From Malacoraja senta (taxonomy: Eukaryota): DNA of 64,000 nt. A program made the position numbers and the translations under genes. This document shows positions 3,244 through 48,000 of this stretch, piece after piece. The notes beneath the pieces were generated by a model. That model searched no databases and had not been told where the DNA came from. It saw only the letters and a program-made list of their open reading frames with translations. Positions within the stretch are counted from its first letter, which is position 1. Each line of letters opens with the position of its first letter. Location: contig CM075982.1 in assembly GCA_038087875.1 (NCBI GenBank), forward strand, positions 12,400,001 to 12,464,000. Reading direction: 5' to 3'.

Positions 3244-6141
3244 AAGAGAGTGAGTGATTTATGTGGAAGACTGTCTTTGAAGGAGGGTCAAGACGGGATC
3301 TCGGATAGCTCCTGAGCATGTTTGTAAAACAAAAGGTGGAAATCCTGTGCGATACTGAGCAAGAGTTGTCAAAAGGATTGGCACCATCTGACTAAACGAC
3401 TGTCTCTTCATGACTAGTTAATTCTAGGATTTGCCATGAAGAAATATTTCAAACTCCCATTTTACAACAATGGATTTTTCTACTTTTATTTTCCGAGGAT
3501 TATTCTCTACGAATGTATCGACTTTCCATGAGAACCACACTAACTGGCCTGGAATGTACGTCATGAATGCGTGTGCAAGACTTGATGAATGTTTCTATTA
3601 TATATTTCCTGATGCAGCCAGTGAAATGAGTAGCTCTAAAATGAAGGTCTGTCTGATTTTAACCTACTTTGCACAGAGGTATGAATGTCTAAAGATGACT
3701 ACACCATAGAAATTGGGCTCCCTCCCTTAGATCCAATTGGATCAATTTTGTTGCAGCTCAGTTCTGAATGGGACTGGAACTGCTCCGGGTTACAGCTGGT
3801 GAGTTTGTGTGGACTCTCAAATGGTATCCTAAATGAAACAACACAAATATTGTCAGAAAACAAAATCAAGCCCAACTTTTTCATGCAATCTCTGGCAATC
3901 GATTAGATGATGGGGAATTCCTCCTGAGTGCATCACAATGGGTGGTTTCTTATCTTTGAACTGACCAACCTAGTACGAGGGCGGCTCTCTGTGTTTGGGA
4001 GTAAGTGGCTATCAGTAAATGTTCATTTTGTACCTGGTGCTGCGAAGGTAAATAGGTGACATAAATGCCTCCAATGTACATTCTGCATTTACACTCATCT
4101 CATGTACAAACACAACAAAATCCATCTGACCTTGCATGATTTGCCATAATTCTTCTTAAAGACCCTGCTCTTCCATCTGTTTTGGCAATTTCTGGTTCAT
4201 TGTCAATTTCTGGTTCATTGTCAAACAGAAAAGTTGAAAACCTGCAGCTTTTAAGTATCACTTAGTTGTCCAACAAACAAAACTGAAAATTAGTGTTATT
4301 TCCTGATCTACAATGATCCATAATCTAATCGAGGAAGTATTCACCAAATGTAAATGTTACTCTTGGTTTCAAAACCTTCTATAAAAAATAGAAATCAAGT
4401 CACTGACATGAAATTTGGAAGCATTTACAATTCCACTTGTGAATGACTTCAACCAATTACAAGAGACAACCCTGACCTGCTTTGGCATATTTACATTAGT
4501 ACTGGGAAGGAGATGGGCCAAATTAGTAGTCAGATCTCACACTGGTGCTTCACACACCAAATTGCTTTGAAAAATGCCACACAAGGTCTACTAGTTCATC
4601 CAAATCTAAATAAAATTAAGCCACTCATTAAGTTTACAGCCAGTTTCAGACCTGTTTTGCTTCTGTATGGAATTAATAACTTGAACAATTACATTTATGT
4701 GGCTACTCTGCAGCTCTGTACCAGCTAGTGTAGGTTTAAAGTGTATGGGTATCATGGTTCCTCCTGGTTTGGTGATGTACTCCCAAGTTATTCTCACTGG
4801 TTGCAGCAGTTATATACATTTCATAGACAAGATCTGTATATGATATCTTTACTCTTTAGTAAAGGGCTGCAGGGTTCCAGGAAACAGGATTTCAATATAT
4901 TAAATAACCTCATCCTTGAGTACGAAAGGGCACAGAGGCTAAAGGAGCAGCCAGCTTGAATTTAGAACTACTAAGTCACGATCCATTAATCCTCTGGAAT
5001 TCTTTGAGGAAGGAATTATCGAACTGAACTGAAATGGAAATATAATAGATTTAGAATGTTAGTTGTTTGGTGATGTGAGACTGTTCGTTGTAGATACGCA
5101 GCATGGAACAAATAGGATATGAGCTTTGGAATAAAATGGTAAGAAATGGAAGATGCTGGGTTTTTGAATGGAGAAGCTTCTCTGGAAATAGTCGTATATA
5201 CACGATGGTGTACAATGGATGCAATTTGATTGCAGTATTCTTCCTATAGGTTTCTGACACTTGCAGCTGACATCAAGTTAACAAGTATCAGGGAGATAAA
5301 TAGCCTTCAGAAAGATTGGGAGCACTTCGAACAGATGGACCAATTGTTTTCAGTCAAATGGGTAGTTTGCTATTTAATTATTTTGTCTCCCATTTTTGAA
5401 CATCCCCAGTTACCAAATCTTACACTGACTATTATATTCATTGGATAGCGCATTTTCTTGCAATCTTTATTCATTACTTCTCAGACTCTTTGAGTGTGAA
5501 CTGGTTCTTACTGCCCTCAAATCCTATTTCTATGTTTGGCAGGTGGATTTCAATACAGATTTACCACTGACGACCTGTGGACCAATACTGAAAAAAAGCT
5601 AAGCAATAAAATGTTAAGATCAGAGTAACATGTGTTACACAGCAGCAAAGCTGGAATTCAGATTACATTTGTGGGAATCCACAAAGAAATCTTAGTTTAA
5701 AAAAAAGACAGACACAAGAGACTGCAGTTGCTGGAATCTTCAGTAAAGAGGAAATTGCCGGAGTAACTTATTAGTCCAGCAGCATCAATGGAGGGAAAGA
5801 GGCAGACTACATTTTGGAATGAAACTAAATCTTATCTGTCCATTTACATCCACAGATGCTGCGTGACGTTACTCCAGCAGTTTGCTTTTTACTTTTGAAA
5901 AAAAAAAACAATTTTCCCTTAAAACTTGGATACAATGCTTTTCTTTGTGCAGTCATCTGACAGCACTGCCAATTAACTCTCTGTGCACCCCTCATATGCT
6001 CAAAAGAAAAAAGTTCCAGCTTATCCAACTTCAACCCTGCAAGTTAGGTAACATCCTGGTGAATCTCTTCTGCACCCTTTCCAACTTGATGACATCCTTC
6101 CAGCTTCCTGCATCATGTTGTCCCAACTTTTGTACTTGATA

Positions 6142-7320
6142 TCGCAGTGGATTCTCTCCTCCGCCGAGCGGAGTTGGACCTTACCCTTAATAACTTTTCG
6201 TTTGACTCCTCCCGTTTCCTCCAAACACAAGGCGTAGCTATGGGCACGGGAATGGGCCCCAGCTATGCCAGCCTCTTTGTGGGTTACGTCGAACAATCCT
6301 TGTTCGAGACGTACCAGGGCCCCATCCCCGACCTCTACCTCCGCTACATCGACGATTGCATTGGTGCTACCTCCTGCACCCACACACAACTCACTAACTT
6401 CATCAACTTCGCCACTAACTTCCATCCGGCACTCAAATACACCTGGACCACTTCCGACACTTGCCTACCATTTCTTGACCTCACTATCTAGACTACACTT
6501 CTTCCCACCCTGCTTCCTGTAAGGACTCCATCCCCTACTCCCAATTCCTCCGTCTATGCCGCATCTGCTCCCAGGTTGAGGTGTTCCACACCAGGGCATC
6601 GGAAATGTCCTCATTCTTCAGGGAACGGGGTTCCCCTCCCTTACCATAGATGAGGCTCTCACCAGGGTCTCTTCGATACCCCGCAACACTGCTCTCTCTC
6701 CCCATCCCCCCACTCGGAACAAGGGCAGAGTCCCCCTAGTCCTCACCTTCCACCCCCTAGTCCTCACCTTCCACCCCACTCCCTGGTCAATTCTTCCCTT
6801 CCCACCCGCACCACCCCCTCCCCGGGCACTTTCCCTTGCAACGGCAAGAGATGCTACACGTGTCGCTTTACCTCCCCCCTCGACTCCATTCAAGGACCCA
6901 AGCAGTCGTTCCAGGTGCGACAGAGGTTCACCTGCACTCCTCCAACCTCATCTATTGCATCCGCTGCTCTAGGTGTCAGCTGATCTACATCGGTGAGACC
7001 AAGCGCAGCACTTCAACTCCCATCCTTTCTGTACTGGGCCTCCTCCATTGCCAGAGTGAGCACCACCGGAAATTGGAGGAGCAGCACCTCATATTCCGCT
7101 TGGGCAGTCTGCACCCCAGTGGCCTGAACATTCTCCAATTTCCGGTAGCCCTTGCTGTCTCCTCCCCTTCTCAGCTCTCCCTCAGCCCTCTGGCTCCTCC
7201 TCTTCCTTTCTTCTCCCCCCCCCCCCCCCACCCTGCATCAGTCTGAAGAAGGGTTTCGGCCCGAAACGTTGCCTATTTCCTTCGCTCCATAGATGCTGCC
7301 GAACCCGCTGAGTTTCTCCA
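6142..7320 (+). mobile_element. Penelope-like retroelement (RT plus GIY-YIG fragments, 3' terminal repeat)
   Basis: FLQTQGVAMGTGMGPSYA...YLRYIDD (RT); NLIYCIRCSRCQLIYIGETKR (GIY-YIG); frameshifted; 16-bp duplication at 6126-6141 and 7335-7350. Confidence 0.9.
7243..7270 (+). ncRNA. minimal type I hammerhead ribozyme motif in the Penelope terminal repeat
   Basis: CUGAAGA-A-GGGU(UUCG)GCCC-GAAAC-GUU; helix I is weak. Confidence 0.6.
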
Positions 7321-8289
7321 AAGGGTATCAAGCTACTTTTGTACTTGATACCCTTCCCTATGAAAGCTAGCATGCCAAATGGCTTCTTCACCACACTATC
7401 CACTTGATTCCCTGCTCTCAGGGAACCAAAATGATTGATATTATGTTGTAAACTTAGATATCTTTCTTCATTGTCCAATGTACCACTAATTTTGGTGTCA
7501 CAAATTTACGAACAATGTTAACTACATGTCATCCAAATTGTTAATGTCAATAACAAACAGCAGTATACCCAGCACCGAAACCGCTGCAGCACTCCACTAG
7601 TTACATGCCTCCAATCAGAAAAACAACCTTTCACTACAAGCCTTTGACTTCTTCTAAGCCTATTTTGAATCCAATTGTCTAGCTCACCTTGGATCACCAT
7701 GTGGGGCCTTCTCAAAGTTGTCCATCCAGACAACGTCCACAGCCCTGTCCTCATTGATCCTCTTGGTGACCTCTTCAAAATTCCATGCTGAATATTCTTA
7801 GTGATTCTGAGTCTATTCAAATGCTGGTAAATATTGTCTCTAAGAATCCCCTTCAACAACTTTCCCACCATTGACATCATGTTTGCCGCCTGTAGTTCCT
7901 TGGCTTGTCCTTACTGCCCTTCTTAAATAATGGAACACCATTAGTCACCCTGCAGTCTTCAGGAACTCCCCTGTGGCGAATGATAATGCAAATATTTCTG
8001 CAAGGACCTCCACTATCTCCTCCTTAGCTTCCCACAGGAACTGAGGGTGTACCTGGTCAGATCCTGGGGATTTATCCACCTTAATGCCCATTAAAACCAC
8101 CAATACCTCCTCTTTGGTCATTCGTATCTGAACTAAGACATCATAACTATTGTGCCTCAATTCCTGAGCTTCTAAGATCTTCTCCTCAATAAAAACGGAC
8201 GAGAAGTATTTATTTAATATCTCCTCCATCTCTTGTAACTCTACACAAAGACACCCCTGTAATCTTTAAGGGGACCTATTCTTTCCCAA

Positions 8290-10450
8290 GCCACCTTTTT
8301 GAAATACCTGTAGAATCCCTTTGAAGAAGCCATTTGGCATGCAGCTTCTCGAGATTGAGGACGGCTTGTTTTCTTGCTTTGCAACTTCTGAAGAGGCTAA
8401 AGTGAGATCCAGAAGTTGTGCCACGGTGGGGAAGGAGGTGCTTGATAAAGTCAATGGGTTGATATTTTGGGACATCGAGCGCTCTGCCCATCATTTTTGC
8501 TGAGGTTCTATGTGCTCGCGATGGAGGAAATCCAAGATTGGTGGTGGGAGCCCAGATGCTCCTTCGCCATTTCAGGTGGTCATTGGTCAAGGATTTCTAT
8601 GAGATGGCGGAGATGGTACATTTGTTCAAGGAAGCTTTGAGAACTGCCTTTAAGTATTTTTCCCTGTCCTTCCAGCAATCTCTTGCTGTAATAGATCTTT
8701 GATATGCTATTTAAGAAAGCTGCTTATATAGCCCCACATTCAGAGCTGGCTGAGCATTATTGGAGGAAGCTGGAGATGTTGGCCTGGAAGAGGACACTGA
8801 CATTATTTATTCCGCCAATGGATTTGAATGATTTTTGCACAAAGACATTGATAGTATCTCCCCAGTGCTTTAAGGTATTATCGTAGGTAAACCATGTTTG
8901 TGAAGCATACCAGAGCATGGGAATCACTGCTGACTCATAGATCATCACCGTTGCGCCAAGTTTGAGATCTTGAGCTTTGATCGCTCTTTTCCTCAGAAAC
9001 CCAAAGGCTCTGCTGGTGCAGTAGAAAGAGAAGTGAACATTTTCATAAAGGCTTCTCTTTGCAGAGCGGGATTTCTGAGATTTGGGAAAGAGCCACCTTT
9101 TCCAAGGTTTCTTCATGGACCCATATTGTCAGGGGGTAGTGTTGTGAGAGGATGTCAAGTACAATGTCGATACTCTGGATTGTTTTAATGGATTGAACCT
9201 TGGCCTCTCAATGTATATCAGCAAGAATTGTCAGTGCATTGCAGCTCACTCGTTGTGATTGAGGTTGGAATGACCTTGGCTCTGGAATGAAGGTGACATT
9301 GGTTGAATGGTTCCCCAATATATGATCATACAAAAATGAGTAGGGGTTTGGAGCAATAACAAAGTCTTGACCCCGGTCTTCGAATGACCTGTTGCTTAGA
9401 ATTATCGCTTGCTTGCTGTCATTTAGCAGATGAAGAATGGAAATTATATATTTTGAGGGCAGATGATTTTGAAAGGGATAATCCACAGTCTTGCAGTTGA
9501 TGATCATTTGATATGCTGTAAACTATGAACTGAGATCCGAGATGTGGTATTGCACTGGAGAAGTCTTTCTCAGTCAGCATGGACAAATGGCCAAAGAGCC
9601 TCATTCGAAGCCATTAATTTCTATAATTCCATCAGTTCTTTTGAACCTGTGCCAGCTCTCTGTAACCTTGATGATCTTAACATAATTTCCATTCCTCTGG
9701 GCAATGTGTAAACATACATACCCAAGTATCATTGCAAGGGTTGCTATGGTAATTGTAACTGCTTAAATCTGTGTGAGTAGTTAGAGTAGCTTGCTATTAA
9801 CATGGAAGTGATTTCTCTGAAATTCAAGTCACATTCTTGCTTACCATGGTTCCAGATAGCAACAGTGACTCAAAAGTAATTTATTGGTTGTGAAAAGTAA
9901 TATTATTACTCTCCATAGCCTTGGAATGTCCTTGGGTAAAAGTCACCAAATGTATGTTCTATTTCTTGCTCTTCAAAAGGTTTGCACGGTTCTTCATGAT
10001 CCAGCGATGACACAATTCTTTGCTTTATTCTCCATTTCTGTGGTCGATTCCTTTTGCACACAACTACCAAATGGGGCCTTTCATTCCAGTTTGGCCCAAC
10101 ATCTCATATCACCAATCCCACTATTGTAAGGGCCGTTGCCACTTTCTCATGTTACCTTGTCCAACACATTTCTTTACACTTGTCCATGCTTTGGAAGGCC
10201 AGTGCCTCACTTACAGGACACCACTGGAACAATTTCCAGGAGCTCCTCCTGTCCCATGCCCTTGATGCACTCTTGTCCCACCTTTTTGCAACCTTACCTG
10301 ATCCAAGCTTCTCAAAACTCTTCCATACCCAAGTTGTGTGGTTCATTTTTACTTCAACCTCTTTGTCATTATTGTTCAGCTCTCCATGCAGGCAAATAAA
10401 CTTCCGAGGCAGATTTCAGAGTGAGAAGCTGTGAAAGAAATGGGATTTTG
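8290..10450 (-). mobile_element. decayed RTE-clade LINE
   Basis: RAFGFLRKR...MIYESAVIPMLWYASQTW resembles the RTE ORF2 C-terminal region; many stops and frameshifts; boundaries approximate. Confidence 0.6.
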
Positions 10451-14400: not shown

Positions 14401-15637
14401 TGACTCAAAATGACTATCCAGATCCATCAGATTATTATCTGAAGACACATCAATGCCTAGCAACACCAGTTTACCTTTCAGGAACTGCAGATATCTGTTC
14501 CGGGGCACCAGTTCATTATCCAGAGGCACAAGATTACTATACAGAAACACTAGATCATTACTCACATTGCTCTCCAAGTGCATCAGTTTGCAGAATTTAA
14601 GAGCTCCTCAGATCATTGACCAAAGACTAATCCCCATTCACTAATCCCCATTCCTGATACTGACCAAGGATGCTGGACCAGTTTCTAATCAGTACCTGGA
14701 GTTTCCAAATTACGATTTAGGAAAGCTATTAGGAACTCCTGAGATAGAATTTGTTAAAAAGGCCAGAAAAAACAGAAGCAGAATCAGTGGGTTATGTTCA
14801 AATCACAGAATGTTGCTTGTGGATTTCTACACAGATTAGCTTTGAGCCTTCAGTTTTTCACAATCCATGTATTTTGTTTTAGATTAAAGATAACCTGCAC
14901 GGAATGCAATTAGCTGATGATACGCAAGAGAGGAAAGTGAGTTGTGAGGAAGACAAACTCCTCCTTGCAGGTTAAGGTAATGGATAGGGTGAAGTATAAT
15001 GTGGGGAAATGTGGGCAACCTCTTTTCCTCTCCACTAATTAGTTCAGGCCTCAACTTCTTGATATCATGGAGCCCGAACCTTCCAATCCTGTTCGACATC
15101 CAAACCAAACTCCTTGCCCTGGTCCTGATCCTGAAAAGCAACCCCTCCCTTGCTATGCTCAATCTTCATTGCCGACCCACTCCCACTGATCCTTATTGCT
15201 GATGACCATCTCTGACTGGCGACCCTGCCTCACACCTAATCCTATTAATTTGGTCCAGGATGGTAAATTTTCTTTAGTGTTCCCGAAAATACAGCAGTGG
15301 TTCAATACTAAACATTAAAGTGTGCAATGCAAGGCTCATGATTAGATTTTTTGTTGGCATGCCTGTCTTGCCTAGTAGAGTACAATTTCTAGGCTATGAG
15401 TTTCTAAGATGATGCTGGTTGACTATTTCTTCTAGCTGGAGAGCCTTGCATTGGAAACAAAGGTAGGCTTGAACTAGGCTGCAGAAGAAAGATCATTGAT
15501 CAGGGCTTCGTACTTCTCCAGAGATCTCTACTCTGGAGAGCTGCAATTGCCCAGACATTGTATGTTCAGCAATTGTGGGTGATACCATTTGGAACCAGGA
15601 GATTTGAGGATTCAGTTTAAAATAATTTATTTAGGCT

Positions 15638-15780
15638 TCCTCTTCTTCTTGCGTATGGTGTGCACAGCCTAAAGTTGTAAGACAACTTGTTCTGTTTGAT
15701 CTTCTGTTTATGCACGCCAGGTTGATTGCATTCGTCGAAACAGGGTGGACCGCGTGAAGGTTGCAATCACCCACCCCATC
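15638..15780 (-). mobile_element. short non-autonomous retroposon with a ribozyme head and RTE-like 3' tail
   Basis: 9-bp TSD atttaggct (15629-15637, 15781-15789); tail tacaactttaggctgtgcacRccatacgcaagaaga shared with 24046-24081. Confidence 0.8.
15723..15777 (-). ncRNA. minimal HDV/CPEB3-like self-cleaving ribozyme
   Basis: P1 GGGGUGG/CCACCCU with G1-U wobble, P2 UGAUUGCA/UGCAAUCA, P3 ACC/GGU, L3 UUCACGC, GU-UUCGA in place of P4, J4/2 CGAA. Confidence 0.85.
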
Positions 15781-18700
15781 ATTTAGGCTGAGTGGCTGCA
15801 TTTCTTGCCTAGCAAGGGGGAAGCACTGAATTAATTGGAAAGAAAGGAGAAATGTTCTGCAATTGATGTTAACCTGGGAAGAATAAACTAATGGGGAATG
15901 TTCATAATGCAGAAAGAAGGCAATGTTAATGTTACTACGACTCTCTGCCCTGGCAGTGAAACATTAAGGCAGTGGTGTTTCAGTATTGAAACTGAAGTAG
16001 CTGCAGTAACAGGGAATTACTCACTGCCTGCTCCATGGGCAGTTTCATATCCATGTGATATTCTGAACTCTTGTTTTGAGGTGTGGCTGGAGCAGATTTA
16101 GTCAGTCAAGCTCTTGAGGTTTGCAAGGCACAGTTTCTGGCAGTGCCACGTGTTCAGGTTGGTTGCTCAACTTGCAAAAATACCAGAGAAACTGAAACTT
16201 GACACAATCAAAGATTTCCTTTTCAAAAATATCTCGAGTAGGACATGATTCACCAAACTTACAAGCACGAAGATACATTTACATTGATGTGAAACTGAAT
16301 TCATGTTTCACACAACTTCATAACCTTCAAATAATCAGTATCTATCTGATAGTTGGACAGAGATCAGAGAATGAAGTACATATTGGAAATCCACCACTCA
16401 TTAATATATGGTTTCTGTGCATCTCACATAGAATTAAGTGGTTTATTGAGTACAAGGAAGCTCATTGATAGAGTTTGTGATACTAAAGCATAAAAGAGCA
16501 GTTGTAGCATTTGTTTATGAGGAAGGCTTTTACTAATTCAGGGAGAGAGATGGCATCATTCAGCGATGAAGGGGAAGGGGTCAATAATGAGGGGAGAACA
16601 GCATCACCCACTGACAGAGGAGAATTTGTCCCTCATTGATGGTTGGGAAATGCATCATTTGCTGTTAACAGTAGAAACTGACTGGCATTTCTTCAATGTG
16701 CACCATGCAGTGATCATGTGCTTAACCCTAGGTTGGGCACTCCCTGATGAGGAGCCTTCCTGACTGGGCTCTGTCTCCTGACTCTCTTTGGAACAAGGAG
16801 CAGGAATCAATGGAAGTAAAGAACACATTCATCAGGACCAATTCCACATTTTACTCAACGGGATTGGCCACCAGATTGAGGCCTAGCCACTCTTCATCAG
16901 GGCTTTTGTATCAATCATATTTGTAACTGCATTGGGATACAGACAATATTGTCGAAATTTGTCCTCCCTCCGGGTGGTCTAACAACCTCCAGTTATTGCT
17001 GAGTTTTAGCTTGCACCATAACTGTGTAAATTTAGTATACTGCAGCTGAAGATATGATCATTGGCATTAGAAGTGAAATGTAAAATTCATTCTTTACCAC
17101 GGAGTATTTGGTGTGAAGGGGGAATTCCACACAGACAGGAAGGTGACCTTTACAAAGCGTGGAGGCCAAGGAGAAAATGATAAGCTGATTATAAATGATA
17201 ACTTGATTATGCTTATCGTCAAGATGTTGGTAAGTGAAACTCTCCAGGTAGATGTACTGGTAACTGAGTCCATCTCCACAGAGAGACAGAGTTTAATGAA
17301 TGAATCTGTACTAGCATGTAACCACAGGGAGTGTGGCTTTTGTTAAGCAGAGCAGGGTAAACTATTTTAGCAATGCATACCATAGCCACATACTCTTTTG
17401 ATCTGAGGGATTGTAATAACGTGGTTCACTTTAGTCTTCATAAATAGGATAGAACTACCAGAAAAAAAAAGTGTATATTCAATGAGAATTTTTAAACATT
17501 TCTGGATGTCAATAATTTTACTCGATAAACCAAGTGAACATTAATTTCCCTGTTTCTGTTACGATTCCTCCTTCCCTTCCTGAAGGAATTAAATCCTTTC
17601 TCATATTCAGCTCTACAGTTATTGACCTCCTTCCAGAGGCCAACAGTATTTTCTGATATATACTCACTGTGAGGGTACATAGATTTCTCAATTATTCACC
17701 CCATCAGAAAGATTTGCATTCATCTGGGAGATTTTATTACAGAAATCCCAGTAACATTTTTAAAACGTTATTTTTTTAAATATAGGGAGTACTGCTGTTA
17801 ATTTTTGGAAAATGTTTAACAAAGAACATGATAATGAACAGATAATTAGTTGATGATTTAAGCATAACAGACAGGCAGCAGCTAGGGTAAAAAGAGCTCT
17901 TCAAAACACTAACATCCTCTCAGGAGGGGAGATGGGAGCATATATTAAAGTCTCATTCAATATATCGGGCATGAAGGGCAGACATTCCTAAGAGGGATTA
18001 TTGGATAGTGATCATCAGCGGAAATGCTGGCTGCATTTTCATCCTTAATTCACCAGCACCAAGGCCAATCGCAACAAAAAGCACATAATAAAATATTAGT
18101 CAATAGTGTAGACAAAGTGGTACAGCAGTGATAGTAAAATGGGTTAAACATAATCAAATGGGGTGGTAGAAAGTGGGGGAAACCTACATTGAAATACGCT
18201 GGCCACTTTTGTTCTCTGTTTATAGACTGTTTGAATTAGGATTTGGGAATTGCAAAGTGGGTATTTAGTGATCACATTCAAGTAAACTGTCAACAGTGAA
18301 GAGAATATAAGTAGATTGGTTGGTCTTTTGATATGCAAAGACAGATGGAAATGTTTATTTAATATTATACATATTAAAATAAATAACAGACAGCATCAAC
18401 TACTTAATGGGAATATGTTAAAGACATCTTAAAGACAGATGAACAGTGAATCCACATGTTAAAAATACATAATTCTTTGTAAATTATTGTAGTTGTGAGT
18501 GCCCTTGTTCAGAGAAAATGAGAGGATATTTCCACCAGATAATACAGCATGACACTGAAGGTAAGAAATTACAATCAGATAGAGAATTGTGATACCATGA
18601 TTGTTTTCACTGGAGTAGAAAAGGAAGTTTGTGATTATTTAGAACCTTTTTTCTTAAATTATATGGTTTAGATAAGGGGAACATATGCTGGAAAGGAAAA

Positions 18701-23963: not shown

Positions 23964-24081
23964 CTCACTGAGGCTTTTCCCTGCTGGTATCAAAGCCATC
24001 CACCCAGCAACTGATACTGTCCTGGACTGGATGTCTACCCTTGACCTACAACTTTAGGCTGTGCACGCCATACGCAAGAAG
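23964..24081 (+). mobile_element. 5'-truncated RTE-like LINE 3' end
   Basis: Reads SLRLFPAGIKAIHPATDTVLDWMSTLDLQL-stop, then a gaagaga-type tail; 11-bp TSD ataaggaattg (23953-23963, 24082-24092). Confidence 0.65.
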
Positions 24082-26175
24082 ATAAGGAATTGTTACAACA
24101 TAAAAAGGATTGCTCAGTTGTTTAGTGCATGAAAAGAAGAAAGATATAGAAACAGTTTAAGGTGTGAATTCTTGGCTTTAAGGATTATATTAGCTCAAGA
24201 TGCAGCCATCAACCATAGACAAATTAGAGAGTGATCCAGTGCCCGGATTTAGGAGAATGCAAGTATTATAAAGTGGAACAGATTACAATGGCTGGGAGGT
24301 GTTAGCTATTTTGAAAAAGATAAAAATGTAAAACTTACCTTAGATCCAATGAAGTTAAGGTGAAAAACGAAAAGTTTTCAACCTTGTACCTTTCCTGTGT
24401 CAAACTTGATTGCTTTATGGCCTGTCTGCAAGATTTTGTAATGTTGCCCTTTATGTATCGAAAATTGGAATGGAAAGTGAACAAGTTACGCTTAACTCAA
24501 AAGGAACCCCTCTAGAAAACTGCATTTGCTTTTGGCCCATGAAGTATGTTAGTTTTGCATACCATAAATTGGATAAAATCCGATTGATGAATCTGGGAAC
24601 ACTATTTGCATTACATGGGCCAAATTGAATGTAAGATGATTTAGTTCAGGAACTGGAGGAGCAGTTGAAATTAATTTGCCAATTGACAAGCAGAAAAAAT
24701 ACCTCTTGGAATAAAATCAGGCAGGGGAAAATAAATTAGTTTCAATACAACCTCCCCACCGTAATTAGACACTATTGTCTCTTAATGCAATCTGTTTGTT
24801 TCACCATTGGTGCCCATTGAAATTGACAAGCAATAGCTTCTATTGACAGCGTGTTCAATGATACCCCAATAAACAATGTGACCATATAGCTTTAAGTATT
24901 TTTTAGCTTGCGGTAACAAAAATAAACAAAGCTATTAAAAAGACCTTTGTTTTTGAAAATCTTGCAGGGAAAAAACTTTGTTATTGCAAGTATAAACTTC
25001 TCTAGCACCTAACCCCCTTTTCCCCCATTGACACAATTTTCACTAATGTAATTTTCTATAACACAAGATTTCTTAGACGCACAATTGCCGCGTTATAGCA
25101 GTACTTGTTGAAAGAAATATAAATCATGGAAAATGTTTACTTGGTTTGTACTTGGGATTCTATTATGAGAAATTATTTCATTAAAATGATGGCAGAACGA
25201 TTTAAGCTGTGCTTCAAAGAGCACAAAAATTTGATAAATAAAATACCGGGAAAATGTTTCTTCAGGTGCTGAGTTCAGAAAAGAGGATACTACTTTAAAA
25301 ATGAAACTTGGCCAGTTAGGAATATTAGGAAAGCAGATGGGATGGTTAATTCTTGTTCCCAGTAAGATTGGGCTTACTGAGACCACAGAAATTCTCCAAA
25401 ATTAAGGTTGTGTTGTCAAGGTAATAAGGTTTACAGAACAAATGTAGGCAATTATATCTCCAGCACAAAGCAGTCATGATTTACTGAATGTTAGAACAGC
25501 ATCAAAATAGTAAATGGCTCATCCGATTGAAGCCATTTAGTAATGATCACATCATTAACTATACTTTTTACCTGTTTTTATTCCTTCAGCGATGTACATC
25601 TCCTAACATTGAAGTTTCAAATGTGACTGCACCAAGAAATATGTAACCCACCAATTAATGTTTAATGGACAACCTGCACATCGATAATATCTTTAATGTA
25701 GGAAAAGTTTCTAGGGTGTTCAAATAAAATTTGATACCAAATAACACTTTTGGCAGGCAACTAAAAGGTTGTCAGTGAGCTAGGTTTTAAAGATCAAGAG
25801 GTAGAGGAGATTTGAGGCAATCTCAGAGCTTAGAGCCCAGAGAACCTAAAGGCAACGGTACCAAAGTGGGGATGTACATGGCTAGGTAAAGTGATGTGTG
25901 TAAAATTAAGTGTAGTCAGGCATAAGTGCAAGACTGAAAGTTTTTGATAAAAGAATTAGATATTTTCAACCAGGGGATTTAAAGGGTAAAAGCTCACTGA
26001 AACTGCAACTACCTCTGTAAGGTTGTTAGAAGTAATCTGACTCCTGAGACAAGTGAAAAGAGAGTAGTATAGAAGTAATAAAATAATGAATCGCGATACA
26101 TTGACATTGTAGTTACTGTATAAAATACATGCTAAGCCTTTCCCTTTCAGCAACCAGCTCATGAAAAATAACTGT

Positions 26176-26931: not shown

Positions 26932-28284
26932 TTATTTGCTTCTGAAACTGAACAAGATCACAAATCCTGTAATAGCCATAAGAGTCACTGTCATCTCCAT
27001 TAGCTTTTGAAGATTCCATCTTTTTTCCAAGTTTTCCCTATTTTTGCGATGCTGCTTCCTTCTCAAGCGAAGTAACTGCTCCATCTCCAGTTGTTTTCCA
27101 TAATGAGCCTTGTAGAACTCATCGAAATTGAACTTTGATTTCCCATCATTTAACGTATCTTCTGAACTTTCAGCCTGTGGTTGTTTTACTGTTGAGACTC
27201 GGAGTTTGTTTGAACGTTTTTTACCAACATGCAAATCTGCAGGAGTCAGAATTCCTCGATCGTACTTTTTCCTTAGGCTCACACAGCCCAACACTGAATA
27301 TGCTTCATTGATTTGAGTAAACCTCAATGCTGCCACCTCACTGCCTGCATTTCTATCTGGATGGTAAATGAATGATTGCTTGTAGTAAGCAGACTTGATC
27401 TGACTATGTGTAGCATTTGGAGACACTTTCAAAATATCATAGTATATTGTGCTGTTCCCTCGTGGAAGAGGGACAGCATTATTTTCACCAAAATAACTCT
27501 TATCATTCTTATAGTAGCCATACATTCTGCATTGCTGTAATGATTTGATGCCAGAATAACGAAGATGAAGATGTTGCCTACCGTCCAGAAGAAACGCACA
27601 AGTGTTTGAGCTGAATAACTGCTGAAACATCTGGATCGAAAGACCACTACGGCATTTGTCATTCACCCCCTGAAAAGTCAAAGCATGACAGGACCAACCA
27701 TTTGCACAGTTGGCAAGTCTTTTAGTTGTGCGAGTATGACTGAAACTGAGGGTATCAACCAAAGGCCCGCAGTCAGCAGTCATGAGAAATTCCGTTCTTC
27801 CACCCATTTCACTTGGCTTCAATGAAGGGCATTCTTTGCTTAGTATCCCAGCTGGGCAAACCGTCGCAGATTTTAGCCGTGTTGGGTAGAAGGGCAACAC
27901 AGCGAGGATTTCGGAGAGGAATTCCACTGCGCGGCCCCCAGCCTTTGCCGGTCCCCACCTGGCACTGTTTCTGACAGATAACAGTGGCAGCCACGGCTCC
28001 AACTTTGCGGCCATCGCCCTTCTCTGGACACACTGCCCCAGAGCAAGAGGGCAAGATGAAGGCGCGCCCCCAACACAGCGCGCACCCGGCGGTGCTCGCC
28101 GGCCGTTGGTTCCCGAACGGCCAAATGACCTTTGCCGAACAATTGCTGCCGTGGATCCCGGGTTATTCCCCGGACCCCGGCTGCACCTCAGGCTGCTGCT
28201 GCCAACGATAACTTTCTTTGTCCAGTCCCCCATGTCCCGGCCACAGTACAGCATCACACTCTGGCCGGCACACACCAGCGCCAT
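26932..28284 (-). CDS. DNAJC30: DNAJC30, mitochondrial J-domain protein, single exon (true start may be Met91 at 28014 or later)
   Basis: J domain YYDILKVSPNATHSQIKSAYYKQSFIYHPDRNAG...LRKKYDRG, FNFDEFYKAHYGKQL motif, C-terminal hydrophobic helix; intronless; next to VPS37D. Confidence 0.9.
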   Translation of the reverse strand: MALVCAGQSVMLYCGRDMGDWTKKVIVGSSSLRCSRGPGNNPGSTAAIVRQRSFGRSGTNGRRAPPGARCVGGAPSSCPLALGQCVQRRAMAAKLEPWLPLLSVRNSARWGPAKAGGRAVEFLSEILAVLPFYPTRLKSATVCPAGILSKECPSLKPSEMGGRTEFLMTADCGPLVDTLSFSHTRTTKRLANCANGWSCHALTFQGVNDKCRSGLSIQMFQQLFSSNTCAFLLDGRQHLHLRYSGIKSLQQCRMYGYYKNDKSYFGENNAVPLPRGNSTIYYDILKVSPNATHSQIKSAYYKQSFIYHPDRNAGSEVAALRFTQINEAYSVLGCVSLRKKYDRGILTPADLHVGKKRSNKLRVSTVKQPQAESSEDTLNDGKSKFNFDEFYKAHYGKQLEMEQLLRLRRKQHRKNRENLEKRWNLQKLMEMTVTLMAITGFVILFSFRSK

Positions 28285-43924: not shown

Positions 43925-44307
43925 GTAAGCTAAGAATACACTGTGTGCATGGGTACAACGTGTAGGGAAGGCTCAGCTTGATGCATTTTAAAGTGAATAT
44001 TCATTTGCATTGAGTATCTTTTAATTTTGCAGAAAGGCTAAATCATAGTTATGTTTATAATACAAAGTTGTTAATATCATACAGCTGAAGATGAGGTTCA
44101 TCTTCAGGAACTTCCGGATTATGGAAAGGCAGTACACCCGAGGCAGTTTATGGATGGTGTTATTTCCATTTGTGTTTTGATCTGAATTATGATTTTTAAT
44201 ATCATACTAGACCAAGTGCAGACCCGCTGGGGTCTCTCCCCAACGCGCGTTTGCGGGGGGGGGGGCTGCGGCGTTACACTCAACACTAACCACCCCCCAA
44301 ACACACA

Positions 44308-44836
44308 GGCGGGGGAGGGGGAGGTGGGGGGAAGTGGAGAGAGAGGAAGGGGGGAGAGGGGTAGGGGGGTGGTGGAAGAGGGAGAGAGGGGTAGGGGAAG
44401 GGGGTGGGGAGAGGGAGGGAGGGGGAGAGAGAGGGGTGGGGGAGGGAGAGAGGTGGGGGAGGGAGAGGGGTGGGGGAAGTGGTGGAAGAGGGACAGAGGG
44501 GTAGGGGGAGAGAGAAGTGGAAGAGTGGGGAGGGAGGTGGAGAGGGGTAGGGGGAGTGGTGGAAGAGGGGACAGAGGGGTAGGGGGGAAGGAGGGGTGCG
44601 GGGAGAGAGGGAACGGGGGGTGGGGGAGAGAGAGGGATGGGGGTGGGAGGTAGGGGGGTGGAGAGGGAGATGGAGGAGGGGGAGGAGAGAGCGGTGTTGG
44701 GGAGGGGAGGAGAGAGGGGTAAGGGGAGAGAGATGTGGGGAGGGGGGAGTGAGGGGAAGAGGGAGATGGGGTAGGGAGAGAGGGTAAGAGTGTGGAAGGG
44801 AGGGGGAAGAGGGGGGGGGGAAGGGGGTGGGGGGAG
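44308..44836 (+). repeat. ~530-bp G-rich polypurine low-complexity tract
   Basis: Almost exclusively G/A with many G3-G5 runs. Confidence 0.9.
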
Positions 44837-44903
44837 AGATAATGTATATACGATTTTCCAAACCCTTTTTGATTTTTTTCCTTCAACCTATTTTTGGCAA
44901 TAG

Positions 44904-45002
44904 GTTGTGGAAGAGGAGGGATGATGAATATTCTGGTGCACCACCACTGAAGAGGTTTGCACAGGACAGAATGCTGTGACTCAGCCGGCAACTGAGAGCT
45001 AA
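44904..45002 (+). CDS. BCL7B: BCL7B last coding exon (compensating +1/-1 indels as assembled)
   Basis: Reconstructs to VVEEEDDEYSGAPPLKRFCTGQNAVTQPATES-stop, similar to the human BCL7B C-terminus. Confidence 0.82.
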
Positions 45003-48000
45003 CCCAGAATCAAAGCAGGCTTTCCCATGGTACCTCTCTGACTTACCATCACTGACTGACTTAAAAGAATGTGATATTTATTTTCTTACTTTTAATGAAT
45101 TGTGATGCATCTGATTTGGGTGTTTGAATTTAAAATGTTTCTGTATTGCAGGATGATGTCCCTTTTGTTATGCAAACAGGAATGGCTGTGGTCTGTGGCT
45201 CCATTGGGCCTTCCTAGTTGAAGACACTTTTATATTGATAGTGTCAAAAGTAGCACTAATCTAAAGGAAGTGTCCTGCTCACCTCTTAACTGGGTCTAGC
45301 ACCAGCCTTTTTCTGGGACAAGAGTACCCATTGGAAGAAATAATGGGCCTCTGTATTGACCCTCAACAGGGACTCACTGCAAAGTGGTACAGTACAAAAA
45401 GATGATTGAAGATCCCAGTCTCTGCTCTTCTGGAGTCCTCAGCATCAATATGAAAGTGCCTTGACACTGAAGTGCCTCTATATCTTCACCCAATGTTTAA
45501 GTGAGCTGACTGAAGAGGGATTTGTGTGCTGTCAATTCTTGATTTTATACATAAATATGCAGTCTTCATCCTCGTTTTATCCATGATATAAAGTTAGACT
45601 CTCATCTGTATTCAATGAAGTAAAATTGAGTGCAATTTCTAAAACAAAAGGGTATTGAAATTGTATATAAACTTTTTTGAAAATTTATATTCTCATGATT
45701 TTACTGAATTTGCTTATGATGCAAAAAGCATTAGATCAAGCTGGTATGGGTACCTTTTGATGTATTAGTTTCCATGACATTGAATCAATTTTAAGTACCA
45801 TTAACCCAGACTTGCATTTTTCTTTGGGGAGAGGCAACAGATGATTTTAGAAATTTATTTTCTTGAAAAGAGAAATTGATCTCCTATATGATCGGGTCAA
45901 TGTTTATGTCGCTACATATGCTGTGGTGCATGAGATAATGTATGGCATACTAACGAGAGTTATAACTTTTGCATATGGATCGCTCATGTGGATTAATTAA
46001 TGAAATTAATTCCCCTGCATATTTGACCAGCTGTTAGTACTGATTTGCCTACGCTTGCACAGCAAGGTTGACTCAGTAAGGAGTTGCTACATTAAAGAAG
46101 GATTAGAATCTTTAATCACCCACCAACCTTTCCTATCAATACTGATCACATCCTTCAAATCAATTTGTCAGCTGTCATCTGCAGCTGATTTTTAAAACAA
46201 GCTGGTTCCTGATTGAAACAAAATTAGATTCAATCCTTGTTAGGTTTTATAGCAGGCAATACTGCTACATTAACAAGTTTAGAAAAAAAACATGAACAAA
46301 CTAGCAGATGTGTGGAGATTTCGGAGACATAGCCATGGTTCCAGTGGATTCTACTGCTAAGCATATCACAGCATTTTGTATTTTTATTTTGAAGATGTCA
46401 CTGTTTACCATCAGTCATTAGTTGGGTTGTTGCCAATACACAAGTATTTTGCAGAAGCACATTAGGCTCACAATGTAGAATGATAACTTCCGTGTATGTA
46501 CCGAGAGGAATATTTGCATCCATGATCTATCATTGACCCCTCAAGAGGTCAGTGTCTGAAATTGAGAAAGTTGGTAAAATAGAACTTCAGACTATATTCA
46601 ATCCTATATGGTTTTCCCTCTATGTTTTTTTCTATACAGCTTACTCATTGATTCTTTTAACACCAGAGTGCGAGAATTTTTTTTCCATAAAAAACAAAAA
46701 ATGGCCAACAATATTCAATAGGTGTCGGCACCATCTGTGGAGAAAGATACTGAGATACTGAAAGATACATTTTGGATTAATGTCCATCCCTGATGAATGC
46801 CAATTTTTATACCATTATCATGATTCATAGCTCGCCACCTTCCTAATGGAGGCAGCTTCTTTGCATGGTGCTCTTGCCAAACTTTGCTCTTTTCTGACCT
46901 TGGGAAATTACATAAAAATAAATGTCCTCATGGGAATTTCCAAAACTTGTGCACCTAAACCTTGACGTGGTGCATGCCGATCACACAGTTAGCAGTGTTT
47001 GGTTGTTTATTTTTATTCTGGAATGTTGTTGTACTCATTTTTAATTATTTGTTTTGCATCAACTTTCAGTCAACCCCATTTGCAAACATCCTTGCATCGT
47101 TCCAACTTGGATATAATTTGTCATCTTTGAGAAAAGTGAATTATTTCCATTTCTTCTGCTGCTAAATTAAACATGAGTGAGATTATCATTTTATTTTTGG
47201 TTAGTCATTGAAAGTTTTAGTAACTCCCTAAGTATCCAGATGTCATCTATTTTATCTTTTATATTGCTTTAGTACCTGCTGTATTTTACTTCACAGTTGC
47301 TTCGCTTTGGTGATAAAGTTTCACCTGCCTTTGCATCTTATTCCTAACTTCCCTATTTAAAAAAAAAAACGTTATGTCCTCTATTTGGTAGTGTGCTTGA
47401 TTGGTCCCTTTCACATTCTTATCTTTTATACAAGTATTAAATATTTTGTGTGAAATGAAAAATATGGATCTTTTAATGTTTTTTTCGTGATTGTCCCATT
47501 GGAATCTCAATATTACTTGCTACTCTAAGTAGCAATATCTTTTAACCAATAGGTCATCTTTCAGAATCTATGAAGATGAAAGATTTCCTAATTACAAATA
47601 TAGACACTCATTTTTCATGGAAGTGAAGACAGGACAATGTGAAAAATGTTCATATTTTGTATTTGCTGATAAATGCATAGATATATTTTTGAATACAATG
47701 ATAAAATAGACTAATCAATTTGTATGTTGAGTATATTTCTTTAGTTTGCTTCAGAATGCATGGAAAGTTGCGCAAAGGAGCAGAAACCAGGACAGTGTTC
47801 CAGAGCATTCAGATTTTGTTCATAAAAATGTTTGAAGGGGCAACAATTGATATTGCGTAGGGCATAATGGGTCATTCCTTGTTTGGTGACGCAAACCTCA
47901 CAATTTGTAACTCAACAATTTAGTTTGAGTAATCTCAGATACCACCTAAAAATAAATGAGGAATTCTACATGTGTGTATGAATAGCCATGATCATTATTC

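What the first reader, a model, noticed from the sequence alone, without database searches (positions are those of the whole stretch)
15638..15780. A SINE-like element headed by a 55-nt minimal HDV/CPEB3-type ribozyme
Seen: the minus strand reads GGGGUGG-G-UGAUUGCA-ACC-UUCACGC-GGU-CCACCCU-GUUUCGA-CGAA-UGCAAUCA (15777 to 15723). Every element of the nested double pseudoknot is present: a 7-bp P1 with the G1-U wobble, a perfect 8-bp P2, a 3-bp P3, and an L3 one base away from the CPEB3 loop as I recall it (UUCACGU). It also has a CPEB3-like single-pair P1.1 and the catalytic C (15734) in CGAA. P4 is reduced to roughly a UUCG loop. The predicted cleavage site (15778/15777) is within 3 nt of the 9-bp TSD, so the element begins essentially at G1, and there are no tRNA A/B boxes. 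Established: HDV-like ribozymes process the 5' ends of RTE and R2 retrotransposons. Inference: this is a promoterless ~140-nt retroposon that cuts itself out of host transcripts and borrows RTE machinery. I do not know of a description of such an element in cartilaginous fishes.
Basis: partly seen in the sequence, partly recalled or inferred. Interest (0 to 1): 0.92.

Follow-up and report, generated by a model that had tools for sequence, protein, structure and literature searches.

The report
Ribozyme-headed mini retroposon, very abundant
A 140-base mobile element, present in tens of thousands of copies in this fish genome and its relatives, starts at the first base of a sequence that fits a minimal hepatitis-delta-type self-cutting RNA and ends in the tail of a LINE. 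It probably trims its own 5' end out of host transcripts, but cutting has not been shown.

Summary
The minus strand 15777-15723 spells a complete HDV/CPEB3-type nested double pseudoknot with almost no P4.

- **Rfam:** on 15700-15800, the only two hits among 4227 families are HDV ribozyme models. Both score below their thresholds. Both place cleavage at 15778/15777.
- **Family:** reads from five coded organisms show a huge repeat family. Each run gives thousands of contigs, and summed depth is about 10^4-10^5 times the flanks. The edges are sharp. The 5' edge falls at G1 or one base upstream.
- **Majority sequence:** it is more canonical than this copy. L3 is UUCACGU, and its nested minimum-energy fold is exactly P1+P3.
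- **LINE tail:** 38 nt of the tail are identical to the 3' end of a 5'-truncated LINE fragment at 23964-24081.
- **No Pol III head:** no tRNA or other Pol III head was found.

Not shown:
- Self-cleavage. PolyA RNA-seq shows no pile-up of ends at G1 and no shortage of reads crossing the site.
- Compensatory covariation. Individual copies could not be obtained.
- The RTE identity of the partner LINE.

The closest known relatives are R2 SIDEs and NARTc/RIME. I file it as a new variant of a known kind. This scan has already noted the same family at least 11 times elsewhere in this genome.

The parts
15781..15789 (.). Upstream copy of the 9-nt direct repeat (ATTTAGGCT on +), the putative target-site duplication
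   Evidence: the repeat finder. Repeats of this length occur by chance at this scale.
15778..15780 (-). Three extra bases (GAU on the element strand) between the repeat and G1. The predicted scissile bond lies between 15778 and 15777.
   Evidence: The Rfam HDV alignment starts 2 nt before G1. Family loose ends fall at 15777/15778.
15723..15777 (-). Minimal HDV-like ribozyme fold, 55 nt. P1 15771-77 with 15742-48. J1/2 15770. P2 15762-69 with 15723-30. P3 15759-61 with 15749-51. L3 15752-58. P1.1 C22 (15756) with G37 (15741). Vestigial P4/UUCG 15735-41. J4/2 CGAA 15731-34.
15734..15734 (-). Predicted catalytic cytosine (C44, first base of J4/2). It is kept in about 90% of RNA-sampled copies although it sits in a CpG.
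   Evidence: 15734 G>A in 52 of 537 reads.
15682..15722 (-). Element-specific body, including an indel-rich variable stretch around 15702-15711. Its 5' part (i 59-69) pairs with the tail (i 112-122) in an 11-bp long-range stem in the majority sequence.
   Evidence: MFE -23.6 kcal/mol, z -2.9.
15644..15681 (-). LINE-derived 3' tail. In the family majority it is 38/38 identical to 24045-24082.
   Evidence: blastn (48 nt, 90% for this copy). Majority-corrected comparison.
15638..15650 (-). (AAG/GAA)n-like terminal microsatellite. Its length varies among copies.
   Evidence: Loose ends at 15636/15641/15642 end in CTTCTT on +.
15629..15637 (.). Downstream copy of the 9-nt direct repeat
23964..24081 (+). 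5'-truncated copy of the partner LINE (3' end only), flanked by an 11-nt direct repeat ATAAGGAATTG (23953-63 / 24082-92). One open frame runs to a TAG at 24055-57, inside the tail shared with the short element.
   Evidence: Loose ends at 15679 in X15 read into the same LINE sequence.

Best explanation
This is one old copy of a very abundant non-autonomous non-LTR retroposon, 140 nt from G1 to the tail. It has three modules:
- a 55-nt minimal (P4-less) HDV/CPEB3-type self-cleaving ribozyme as its first 55 nt;
- a structured body;
- about 40 nt of the 3' end of a LINE, ending in a (GAA)n-like microsatellite.

Proposed mechanism:
1. Source copies are transcribed as part of longer transcripts.
2. 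The ribozyme cleaves immediately 5' of G1 and so defines the RNA's 5' end.
3. The partner LINE's reverse transcriptase recognises the shared 3' tail and copies the RNA into new sites by target-primed reverse transcription.

Shown: the fold-compatible sequence, the family-wide 5' edge at G1, the shared LINE tail, the lack of a Pol III head, and abundance in several species.

Inferred: catalysis, co-transcription as the source of template RNA, and which LINE clade supplies the enzyme.
For: **Sequence and specificity**
- The sequence reads as claimed.
- It is the only site in the window that meets topology plus the L3 and J4/2 signatures. There were 0 such sites in 60 simulated windows.
- Of 4227 Rfam families, only two HDV ribozyme models hit 15700-15800. 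Their P1, P3, L3 and J4/2 assignments are the same, and P4 is replaced by 5 nt.

**Family evidence**
- 4,500-9,000 contigs per run match 15638-15778. Summed depth is 0.3-3.5 million against 35-50 in the flanks.
- The best-supported loose ends are at 15777/15778 and at 15636/41/42.
- This is seen in organisms A-D and F.
- The same insertion sits at the orthologous site in B, C and D (table 8).

**Majority sequence**
- It has L3 UUCACGU and J4/2 CGAA. The bases U20, C22, A23, G25 and the C-G-A-A linker carry the same numbers as the CPEB3 residues named in PMC4836649.
- Its nested MFE is exactly P1+P3.

**Common family variants in the ribozyme avoid breaking helices**
- Position 8 is G/A and lies in J1/2.
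- Position 32 is A/G and stays paired with U5.
- Position 31 is C>U and gives G6.U.
- Position 45 is G/U, the second base of J4/2.

**Other support**
- The tail is 38/38 identical to the LINE fragment at 24045-24082.
- There is no tRNA and no other Rfam family.
- P4-less HDV-like ribozymes are active in vitro (Riccitelli 2014 as cited, and the theta ribozymes of bioRxiv 10.1101/2023.06.13.544163).
- Ribozyme plus LINE-tail non-autonomous elements are proven for R2 SIDEs (PMC3414825).
Against: - **RNA-seq gives no sign of cleavage.** In polyA RNA-seq of organism D, no place shows many molecules beginning or ending. 235 reads cross the 5' junction against 209 for the 3' junction. Coverage drops at the 5' edge by the same factor on both read directions. 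The C44>U variant is not enriched on either direction.
- **Rfam scores are far below gathering thresholds** (22 bits against 50).
- **No double-sided compensatory change could be examined**, because individual copies could not be retrieved. Low variation in the helices is largely explained by their lack of CpG.
- **The 5' edge is not diagnostic.** A sharp 5' edge is also what a transcription start would give.
- **This copy has a competing fold.** It carries C26, which allows a nested fold of -14.6 against -12.1 kcal/mol.
- **Amplification is unexplained.** How a promoterless element reached about 10^4-10^5 copies is not accounted for.
Confidence: 0.7

Rival explanations
1. The head is a real HDV-like fold by descent, but in this family it no longer acts mainly as a nuclease. 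It might serve as an internal promoter (as Pr77 does in L1Tc/NARTc), or as a compact 5' structure that protects the RNA or binds the LINE protein. Under this reading the 5' end at G1 comes from transcription initiation.
For: - RNA-seq shows no cleavage signature.
- The very high copy number is easier to reach with an internal promoter.
- Pr77 of L1Tc/NARTc is both a promoter and an HDV-like ribozyme (PMC3383444).
- The R2 protein binds its ribozyme region (PMC6765202).
Against: - No Pol III A/B boxes or tRNA/5S/7SL/snRNA similarity.
- 92% of RNA reads on the element run on into unrelated flanks, so they come from co-transcripts rather than discrete element transcripts. A polyA library would miss Pol III products, however.
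- The catalytic C, the G1.U pair and CGAA/CUAA are all kept in the majority. A pure promoter or binding role would not require these.
Confidence: 0.17
2. Chance resemblance: an ordinary SINE with an uncharacterised head whose first 55 nt merely happen to fit the HDV descriptor.
For: - Bare topology hits occur about 3 times per 64 kb by chance.
- Rfam scores are below threshold.
- No activity data exist.
Against: - The full signature occurred 0 times in 60 simulated windows.
- It starts within one base of the family's 5' edge.
- The only Rfam families hit are the HDV ones, 2 of 4227.
- The family majority is closer to the canonical core than this copy is.
Confidence: 0.05
3. Not a retroposon at all: a fragment of satellite DNA, a MITE or an assembly artefact.
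For: Nothing specific beyond its short length and abundance.
Against: - The copies are dispersed, with unrelated AT-rich flanks on both sides (loose-end consensus agreement about 0.35).
- There are no terminal inverted repeats.
- It has a LINE 3' tail with a variable microsatellite end.
- The same insertion is seen in independent contigs of four organisms.
Confidence: 0.02

Closest known systems
R2 SIDEs and R2/R1 hybrid SIDEs of Drosophila (PMC3414825)
   Same: Short non-coding elements built from a 5' HDV-like ribozyme joined to the 3' end of a LINE. They are mobilised in trans and depend on co-transcription. Their 5' junctions show the variation typical of target-primed reverse transcription.
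   Different: - SIDEs are 200-530 bp, site-specific in rDNA, low in copy number, and carry a full ribozyme with P4. Their cleavage was shown in vitro.
- This element is 140 nt, dispersed genome-wide at roughly 10^4-10^5 copies, has a P4-less ribozyme, sits in a vertebrate, and its cleavage is untested.
- Whether its ribozyme comes from its own partner LINE is unknown.
NARTc / RIME / SIDER of trypanosomatids, with the Pr77/L1TcRz head (PMC3185411, PMC3383444, PMC4035085)
   Same: Dispersed, abundant non-autonomous partners of a LINE that share a 5' HDV-like ribozyme.
   Different: - Pr77 is 77 nt and doubles as a Pol II promoter.
- The hosts are protists.
- The elements are internally deleted LINEs with poly(A) tails.
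- No sequence relationship to this element was tested.
Minimal HDV-like ribozymes (drz-Mtgn-1; theta ribozymes of gut phages; bioRxiv 10.1101/2023.06.13.544163)
   Same: About 50-60 nt, with no P4 domain, the same nested double pseudoknot and a catalytic C at the start of J4/2. They are active in vitro.
   Different: That preprint found them almost only in Caudoviricetes phages, next to tRNA genes, where they process 3' trailers. This element is the head of a eukaryotic retroposon.
Mammalian CPEB3 ribozyme (PMC4836649)
   Same: Helix lengths and numbering are the same for nt 1-38. P1 is 7 bp and P3 is 3 bp. L3 is 7 nt with U20, C22, A23 and G25.
   Different: - CPEB3 is a single-copy intronic element of mammals with a 7-bp P4 hairpin.
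- The Rfam CPEB3 model gives no hit here at E up to 10.
- No descent is shown.
HDV-like ribozymes at the 5' ends of RTE, Baggins and R2 LINEs (Ruminski et al. 2011, as summarised in PMC6765202)
   Same: Promoterless non-LTR elements freed from co-transcripts by a 5' HDV-like ribozyme.
   Different: Those are autonomous LINEs, mostly of invertebrates. I could not read that paper (it is not held) or find the 5' end of the partner LINE.

Membership tests
HDV-like (delta-like) self-cleaving ribozymes | Nested double pseudoknot: P1 and P2 interleaved, with P3/P1.1 nested inside | tested here: met
   P1 7/7, P2 8/8 (7/7 in the majority), P3 3/3 and C22-G37 are all standard pairs.
HDV-like (delta-like) self-cleaving ribozymes | G1.U wobble closing P1 at the cleavage site, with the ribozyme lying wholly 3' of the cut | tested here: met
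   G1 (15777) pairs with U36 (15742). The family's 5' edge is at 15777/15778.
HDV-like (delta-like) self-cleaving ribozymes | Catalytic cytosine as the first base of J4/2, followed by N-R-A | tested here: met
   C44-G-A-A at 15734-15731. Among the RNA reads, about 10% read U at C44; at position 45 about 58% read G, 32% U and 10% A.
HDV-like (delta-like) self-cleaving ribozymes | P4 helix | tested here: not met
   Only GUUUCGA lies between P1 and J4/2. The Rfam alignment replaces 35 model positions with 5 nt. The minimal subclass lacks P4 by definition (bioRxiv 10.1101/2023.06.13.544163).
HDV-like (delta-like) self-cleaving ribozymes | Reaches Rfam's curated score for an HDV-type model | tested here: not met
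   RF00094 scores 22.1 bits against 50. RF02682 scores 13 against 44. These are nevertheless the only two families hit. The models cannot score P2 or P1.1, and they penalise the missing P4.
HDV-like (delta-like) self-cleaving ribozymes | Site-specific self-scission, abolished by C-to-U at the catalytic C | not testable with these tools
   The only proxy is polyA RNA-seq, which shows no excess of ends at G1. This is uninformative for source copies.
HDV-like (delta-like) self-cleaving ribozymes | Pairing kept through covariation among homologues | tested here: inconclusive
   Only one-sided, pair-preserving variants were seen (A32/G32 opposite U5; C31>U opposite G6). Individual copies could not be obtained.
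Classical SINE (Pol III, with a tRNA/7SL/5S-derived head) | Head derived from a Pol III gene with an internal promoter | tested here: not met
   ARAGORN finds none. No tRNA, 5S, 7SL or snRNA hit in Rfam at E up to 10 or at gathering thresholds.
Classical SINE (Pol III, with a tRNA/7SL/5S-derived head) | 3' tail shared with a partner LINE, dispersed high copy number, flanking duplications | tested here: met
   38/38 identity to 24045-24082. Thousands of contigs with unrelated flanks. A 9-nt direct repeat flanks this copy.
SIDE-type element (internally deleted LINE that keeps the LINE's own 5' ribozyme) | 5' ribozyme homologous to that of the autonomous partner | not tested
   Only 118 nt of the partner's 3' end are in the window. 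There is no RT ORF here.
RTE-clade partnership | The partner LINE encodes an RTE-type APE/RT | not testable with these tools
   The only hints are an open frame ending about 25 nt before the (GAA)-like tail, and the very short 3' UTR with (GAA)2 described for the RTE-related Rex3 (PMC6274825). These are suggestive only.
CPEB3 ribozyme family | Orthologous position in a CPEB3 intron, and a match to Rfam's CPEB3 model | tested here: not met
   It is a dispersed repeat. No CPEB3 model hit at E up to 10.

The most novel reading that the evidence does not exclude
A vertebrate lineage hosts a retroposon family of about 10^4-10^5 copies. In place of a Pol III promoter, its only 5' module is an active, P4-less HDV-like ribozyme, a class so far tied to phages. 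Its CPEB3-like core (same helix lengths, L3 and J4/2) would make it a candidate for the kind of mobile element from which the mammalian CPEB3 ribozyme was domesticated.
Probability: 0.4. Interest if true: 0.78.

Novelty: new variant of a known kind. Interest (0 to 1): 0.62.

Why it matters
If the head cleaves, this would be a very small and very successful vertebrate retroposon built from three minimal modules: a self-cutting 5' end, a stem, and a LINE recognition tail. That would show a SINE-like element can reach SINE-like copy numbers without a Pol III promoter.

It would also place minimal, P4-less HDV-like ribozymes in a eukaryotic genome with an evident function. It would supply tens of thousands of natural sequence variants for structure-function analysis. 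It would give a concrete, testable model for a retrotransposon origin of the CPEB3 ribozyme.

Practically, repeat annotation of these genomes should recognise a ribozyme-headed class, and intronic sense copies could act as transcript-cutting sites.

Tried and rejected
**Attempts to get individual copies for covariation all failed**
- Only one full copy is in the window (DNA search; blastn).
- A relaxed descriptor finds no sister family here.
- Exact-pattern scans of metagenome, prokaryote-genome and viral contigs gave 0 hits.
- A protein search with the element's open reading frame found nothing.

**Other checks that led nowhere or were negative**
- Rfam on 3.5 kb at E up to 10 missed the ribozyme. 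Only the 101-nt search with laxer filters found the HDV models.
- Plain MFE folding of the whole element is not better than shuffles (z 0.14). This is expected for a pseudoknot.
- A Pol III head is rejected.
- No RT ORF is in the window. ORFs of 120 aa or more were listed, and six were scanned against Pfam.
- The RNA-seq test for in vivo cleavage gave no signal.
- Ruminski 2011 and Webb 2009 are not held in the library, so their lists of vertebrate or SINE examples could not be checked.
- Dfam and Repbase are not available, so prior annotation as a repeat is unchecked.

Full report
**1. The observation**

One search shows the minus strand 15777-15723 exactly as quoted. I number from G1 = 15777.

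| Part | Positions | Sequence |
|---|---|---|
| P1 | 1-7 with 30-36 | GGGGUGG / CCACCCU, G1.U36 wobble |
| J1/2 | 8 | G |
| P2 | 9-16 with 48-55 | UGAUUGCA / UGCAAUCA |
| P3 | 17-19 with 27-29 | ACC / GGU |
| L3 | 20-26 | UUCACGC |
| P1.1 | C22 with G37 | |
| P4 position | 37-43 | GUUUCGA |
| J4/2 | 44-47 | CGAA |

All 18 helix pairs are standard.

The 9-nt direct repeat ATTTAGGCT is present at 15629-37 and 15781-89. One search also found three other repeats of 9 nt or more in the same 600 nt, so this repeat alone proves little.

**2. Is it more than chance?**

I wrote a descriptor requiring G1.U, a 7-bp P1, a 3-bp P3, a 7-8 nt L3, P2 of at least 6 bp, and a link of up to 80 nt.
- The bare topology is not special. 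There are 4 sites in the window against a mean of 3.35 in 60 first-order Markov windows.
- Requiring L3 = N-Y-C... and J4/2 = C-[G/U]-R-A leaves only 15777(-). No simulated window had such a site.
- A looser scan that allows one mismatch also finds only this site.

Rfam gives independent support. A search of 15700-15800 with lax filters returns just two of 4227 families, and both are HDV ribozymes.
- RF00094 scores 22.1 bits (E 0.12; gathering score 50).
- RF02682 scores 13 bits.

The scores are sub-threshold. That is expected, because these models cannot score P2 or P1.1 and they penalise the missing P4. A 3.5-kb search had missed the site.

**3. It is a repeat family, and its 5' edge is G1**

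I laid contigs of four DNA runs at 80% likeness.
- 4,506-9,031 contigs per run piled on 15638-15778.
- Summed word depth was 0.3-3.5 million, against 35-50 in the flanks. The tool warns that this is not a copy number. I read it as roughly 10^4-10^5 copies.
- Flank depth returns to single-copy level within one bin on each side.
- The best-supported loose ends are 'behind' 15777 and 15778, and 'before' 15636, 15641 and 15642. Their flank consensus is unrelated and AT-rich (agreement about 0.35).

So the family begins at G1, or one base upstream, and ends in a microsatellite of variable length.

On the species:
- Organism A is the window's own species, since its flanks match with 0 differences.
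- Organisms B, C and D differ by 2-5% in the flanks, yet carry the same insertion at the orthologous site (table 8).
- Organism F also has the family.

**4. The family majority is more canonical than this copy**

RNA reads sample copies without assembly bias.
- Position 9 is A in about 100% of reads. P2 is therefore 7 bp, and the 8th pair is private to this copy.
- Position 26 is U in 98%, so L3 is UUCACGU.
- Position 32 is G in 69% of reads, giving a U5.G pair. The window copy has A32, giving U5-A. Both keep the pair.
- Position 31 is C>U in 8%, giving G6.U.
- Position 8 is G>A in 35%. It lies in J1/2.
- Position 45 is G>U in 32% and G>A in 10%. It is the second base of J4/2.
- The CpG sites C24, C41, G42 and C44 each decay in 7-15% of reads.
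- No variant at 3% or more was listed in P2, in P3 or in the 5' strand of P1. Those helices contain almost no CpG, and 20 weaker variants were not displayed, so I do not count this as evidence of selection.

The majority sequence's nested minimum-energy fold is exactly P1+P3 (-12.4 kcal/mol). The window copy's C26 opens a competing fold (-14.6 against -12.1).

PMC4836649 names U20, C22, A23, G25, the one-G-C-plus-U-U P1.1, and the C57-G58-A59-A60 linker in the CPEB3 ribozyme. The same bases carry the same numbers here up to position 38.

**5. The rest of the element**

- A blastn search of the element against the window finds its last 48 nt at 24041-24088. After correcting to the family majority, 38/38 nt are identical to 24045-24082.
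- That site is a 118-nt LINE 3' end (23964-24081), flanked by an 11-nt direct repeat.
- Contigs that break off at 15679 continue into the same LINE sequence. The LINE is therefore itself repeated and shares only the tail.
- One frame of the LINE fragment is open down to a TAG inside the shared tail. This suggests a very short 3' UTR, as described for the RTE-related Rex3 (PMC6274825). No RT ORF is in the window, so 'RTE' remains unverified.
- The body and tail of the majority sequence fold into an 11-bp long-range stem around an inner hairpin (-23.6 kcal/mol, z -2.9).
- There is no tRNA and no other RNA family.

**6. Does it cut in vivo?**

The one usable raw-read RNA run was polyA, from organism D. 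831 of its reads lay on the element.
- No place shows many molecules beginning or ending.
- 131 + 104 reads run across the 5' edge. 63 + 84 + 62 run across the 3' edge.
- Coverage falls at the 5' edge by the same factor (0.74) on both read directions.
- C44>U is not enriched on either direction.
- 92% of the laid reads run on into unrelated flanks, so these are co-transcripts.

This argues against efficient cleavage of the bulk of the (mostly old) copies in steady-state polyA RNA. It says little about source copies.

Read depth is about 1.6 times higher on one direction. This would fit fewer sense-oriented copies in mature transcripts. I could not confirm the library's strandedness.

**7. Interpretation**

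- The probability that an unrelated SINE head fits the full HDV signature starting at its first base is negligible. I take the head to be an HDV-like ribozyme, at least by descent.
- P4-less HDV-like ribozymes cleave in vitro (Riccitelli 2014 as cited in, and the theta ribozymes of, bioRxiv 10.1101/2023.06.13.544163).
- Ribozyme plus LINE-tail parasites are proven for R2 SIDEs (PMC3414825). Dispersed analogues exist in trypanosomatids (PMC3185411, PMC3383444).
- The most likely mechanism is therefore co-transcription, self-cleavage 5' of G1, and trans-mobilisation through the shared tail (confidence 0.7).
- The main rival is that the fold now serves as a promoter or a binding or protective structure, with the 5' end set by initiation (0.17).

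**8. Novelty**

- I found no paper in the held library that describes such an element in cartilaginous fishes or in any vertebrate.
- A review states in general terms that some SINEs use HDV-like ribozymes (PMC6765202). I could not read its source, and I could not check Dfam or Repbase.
- This scan has noted the same family at least 11 times elsewhere in this genome. One follow-up reached the same reading. An untested note claims covariation between two such ribozyme families.
- I could not verify the organism. A DNAJC30-like intronless ORF in the window fits a vertebrate.

**Verdict:** a new variant of a known kind, with cleavage untested.

Noticed in passing
window 26932-28284 (-): An intronless 450-aa ORF with a DnaJ domain (Pfam 1.3e-19). 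Its best solved-structure match is the J domain of human WBSCR18 (DNAJC30), which I recall being a single-exon gene in human. It is probably the DNAJC30 orthologue.
   Followed up: partly
window 15656-15719 (-), element positions 59-69 and 112-122: In the family majority, the element-specific stretch just after the ribozyme is a perfect inverted repeat of part of the LINE-derived tail (UGGCGUGCACA / UGUGCACGCCA). Together they form an 11-bp stem around an inner hairpin (z -2.9). The common variants U59>C and G61>A would weaken its end, and no compensating change is seen.
   Followed up: partly
window 15638-15777, RNA run X22: Read depth over the element is about 1.6 times higher with the first mate on - than on +. 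Several variant frequencies also differ between directions, for example 15660 G>A at 24% against 4%. This may reflect an orientation bias of copies inside transcripts, or a few highly expressed loci.
   Followed up: no
window 15620-15637: A 4-nt ATTT unit next to or inside the downstream direct repeat is deleted in organisms B, C and D relative to the window. This is a small tandem-unit indel between species.
   Followed up: no
window 44001-46000 and 6001-8000: Strong local GC skew (+0.42 and -0.35), with overlapping ORFs on both strands at 44119-44991 that have no Pfam match. Probably simple or strand-biased repeats.
   Followed up: no
window 15702-15711: A hotspot of indels and alternative sequence among copies. 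Loose ends at 15703/15711 read ...ATTTGATCTTATTTGATTG..., which suggests subfamilies that differ in the number of a TTTGAT-like unit in the body.
   Followed up: no
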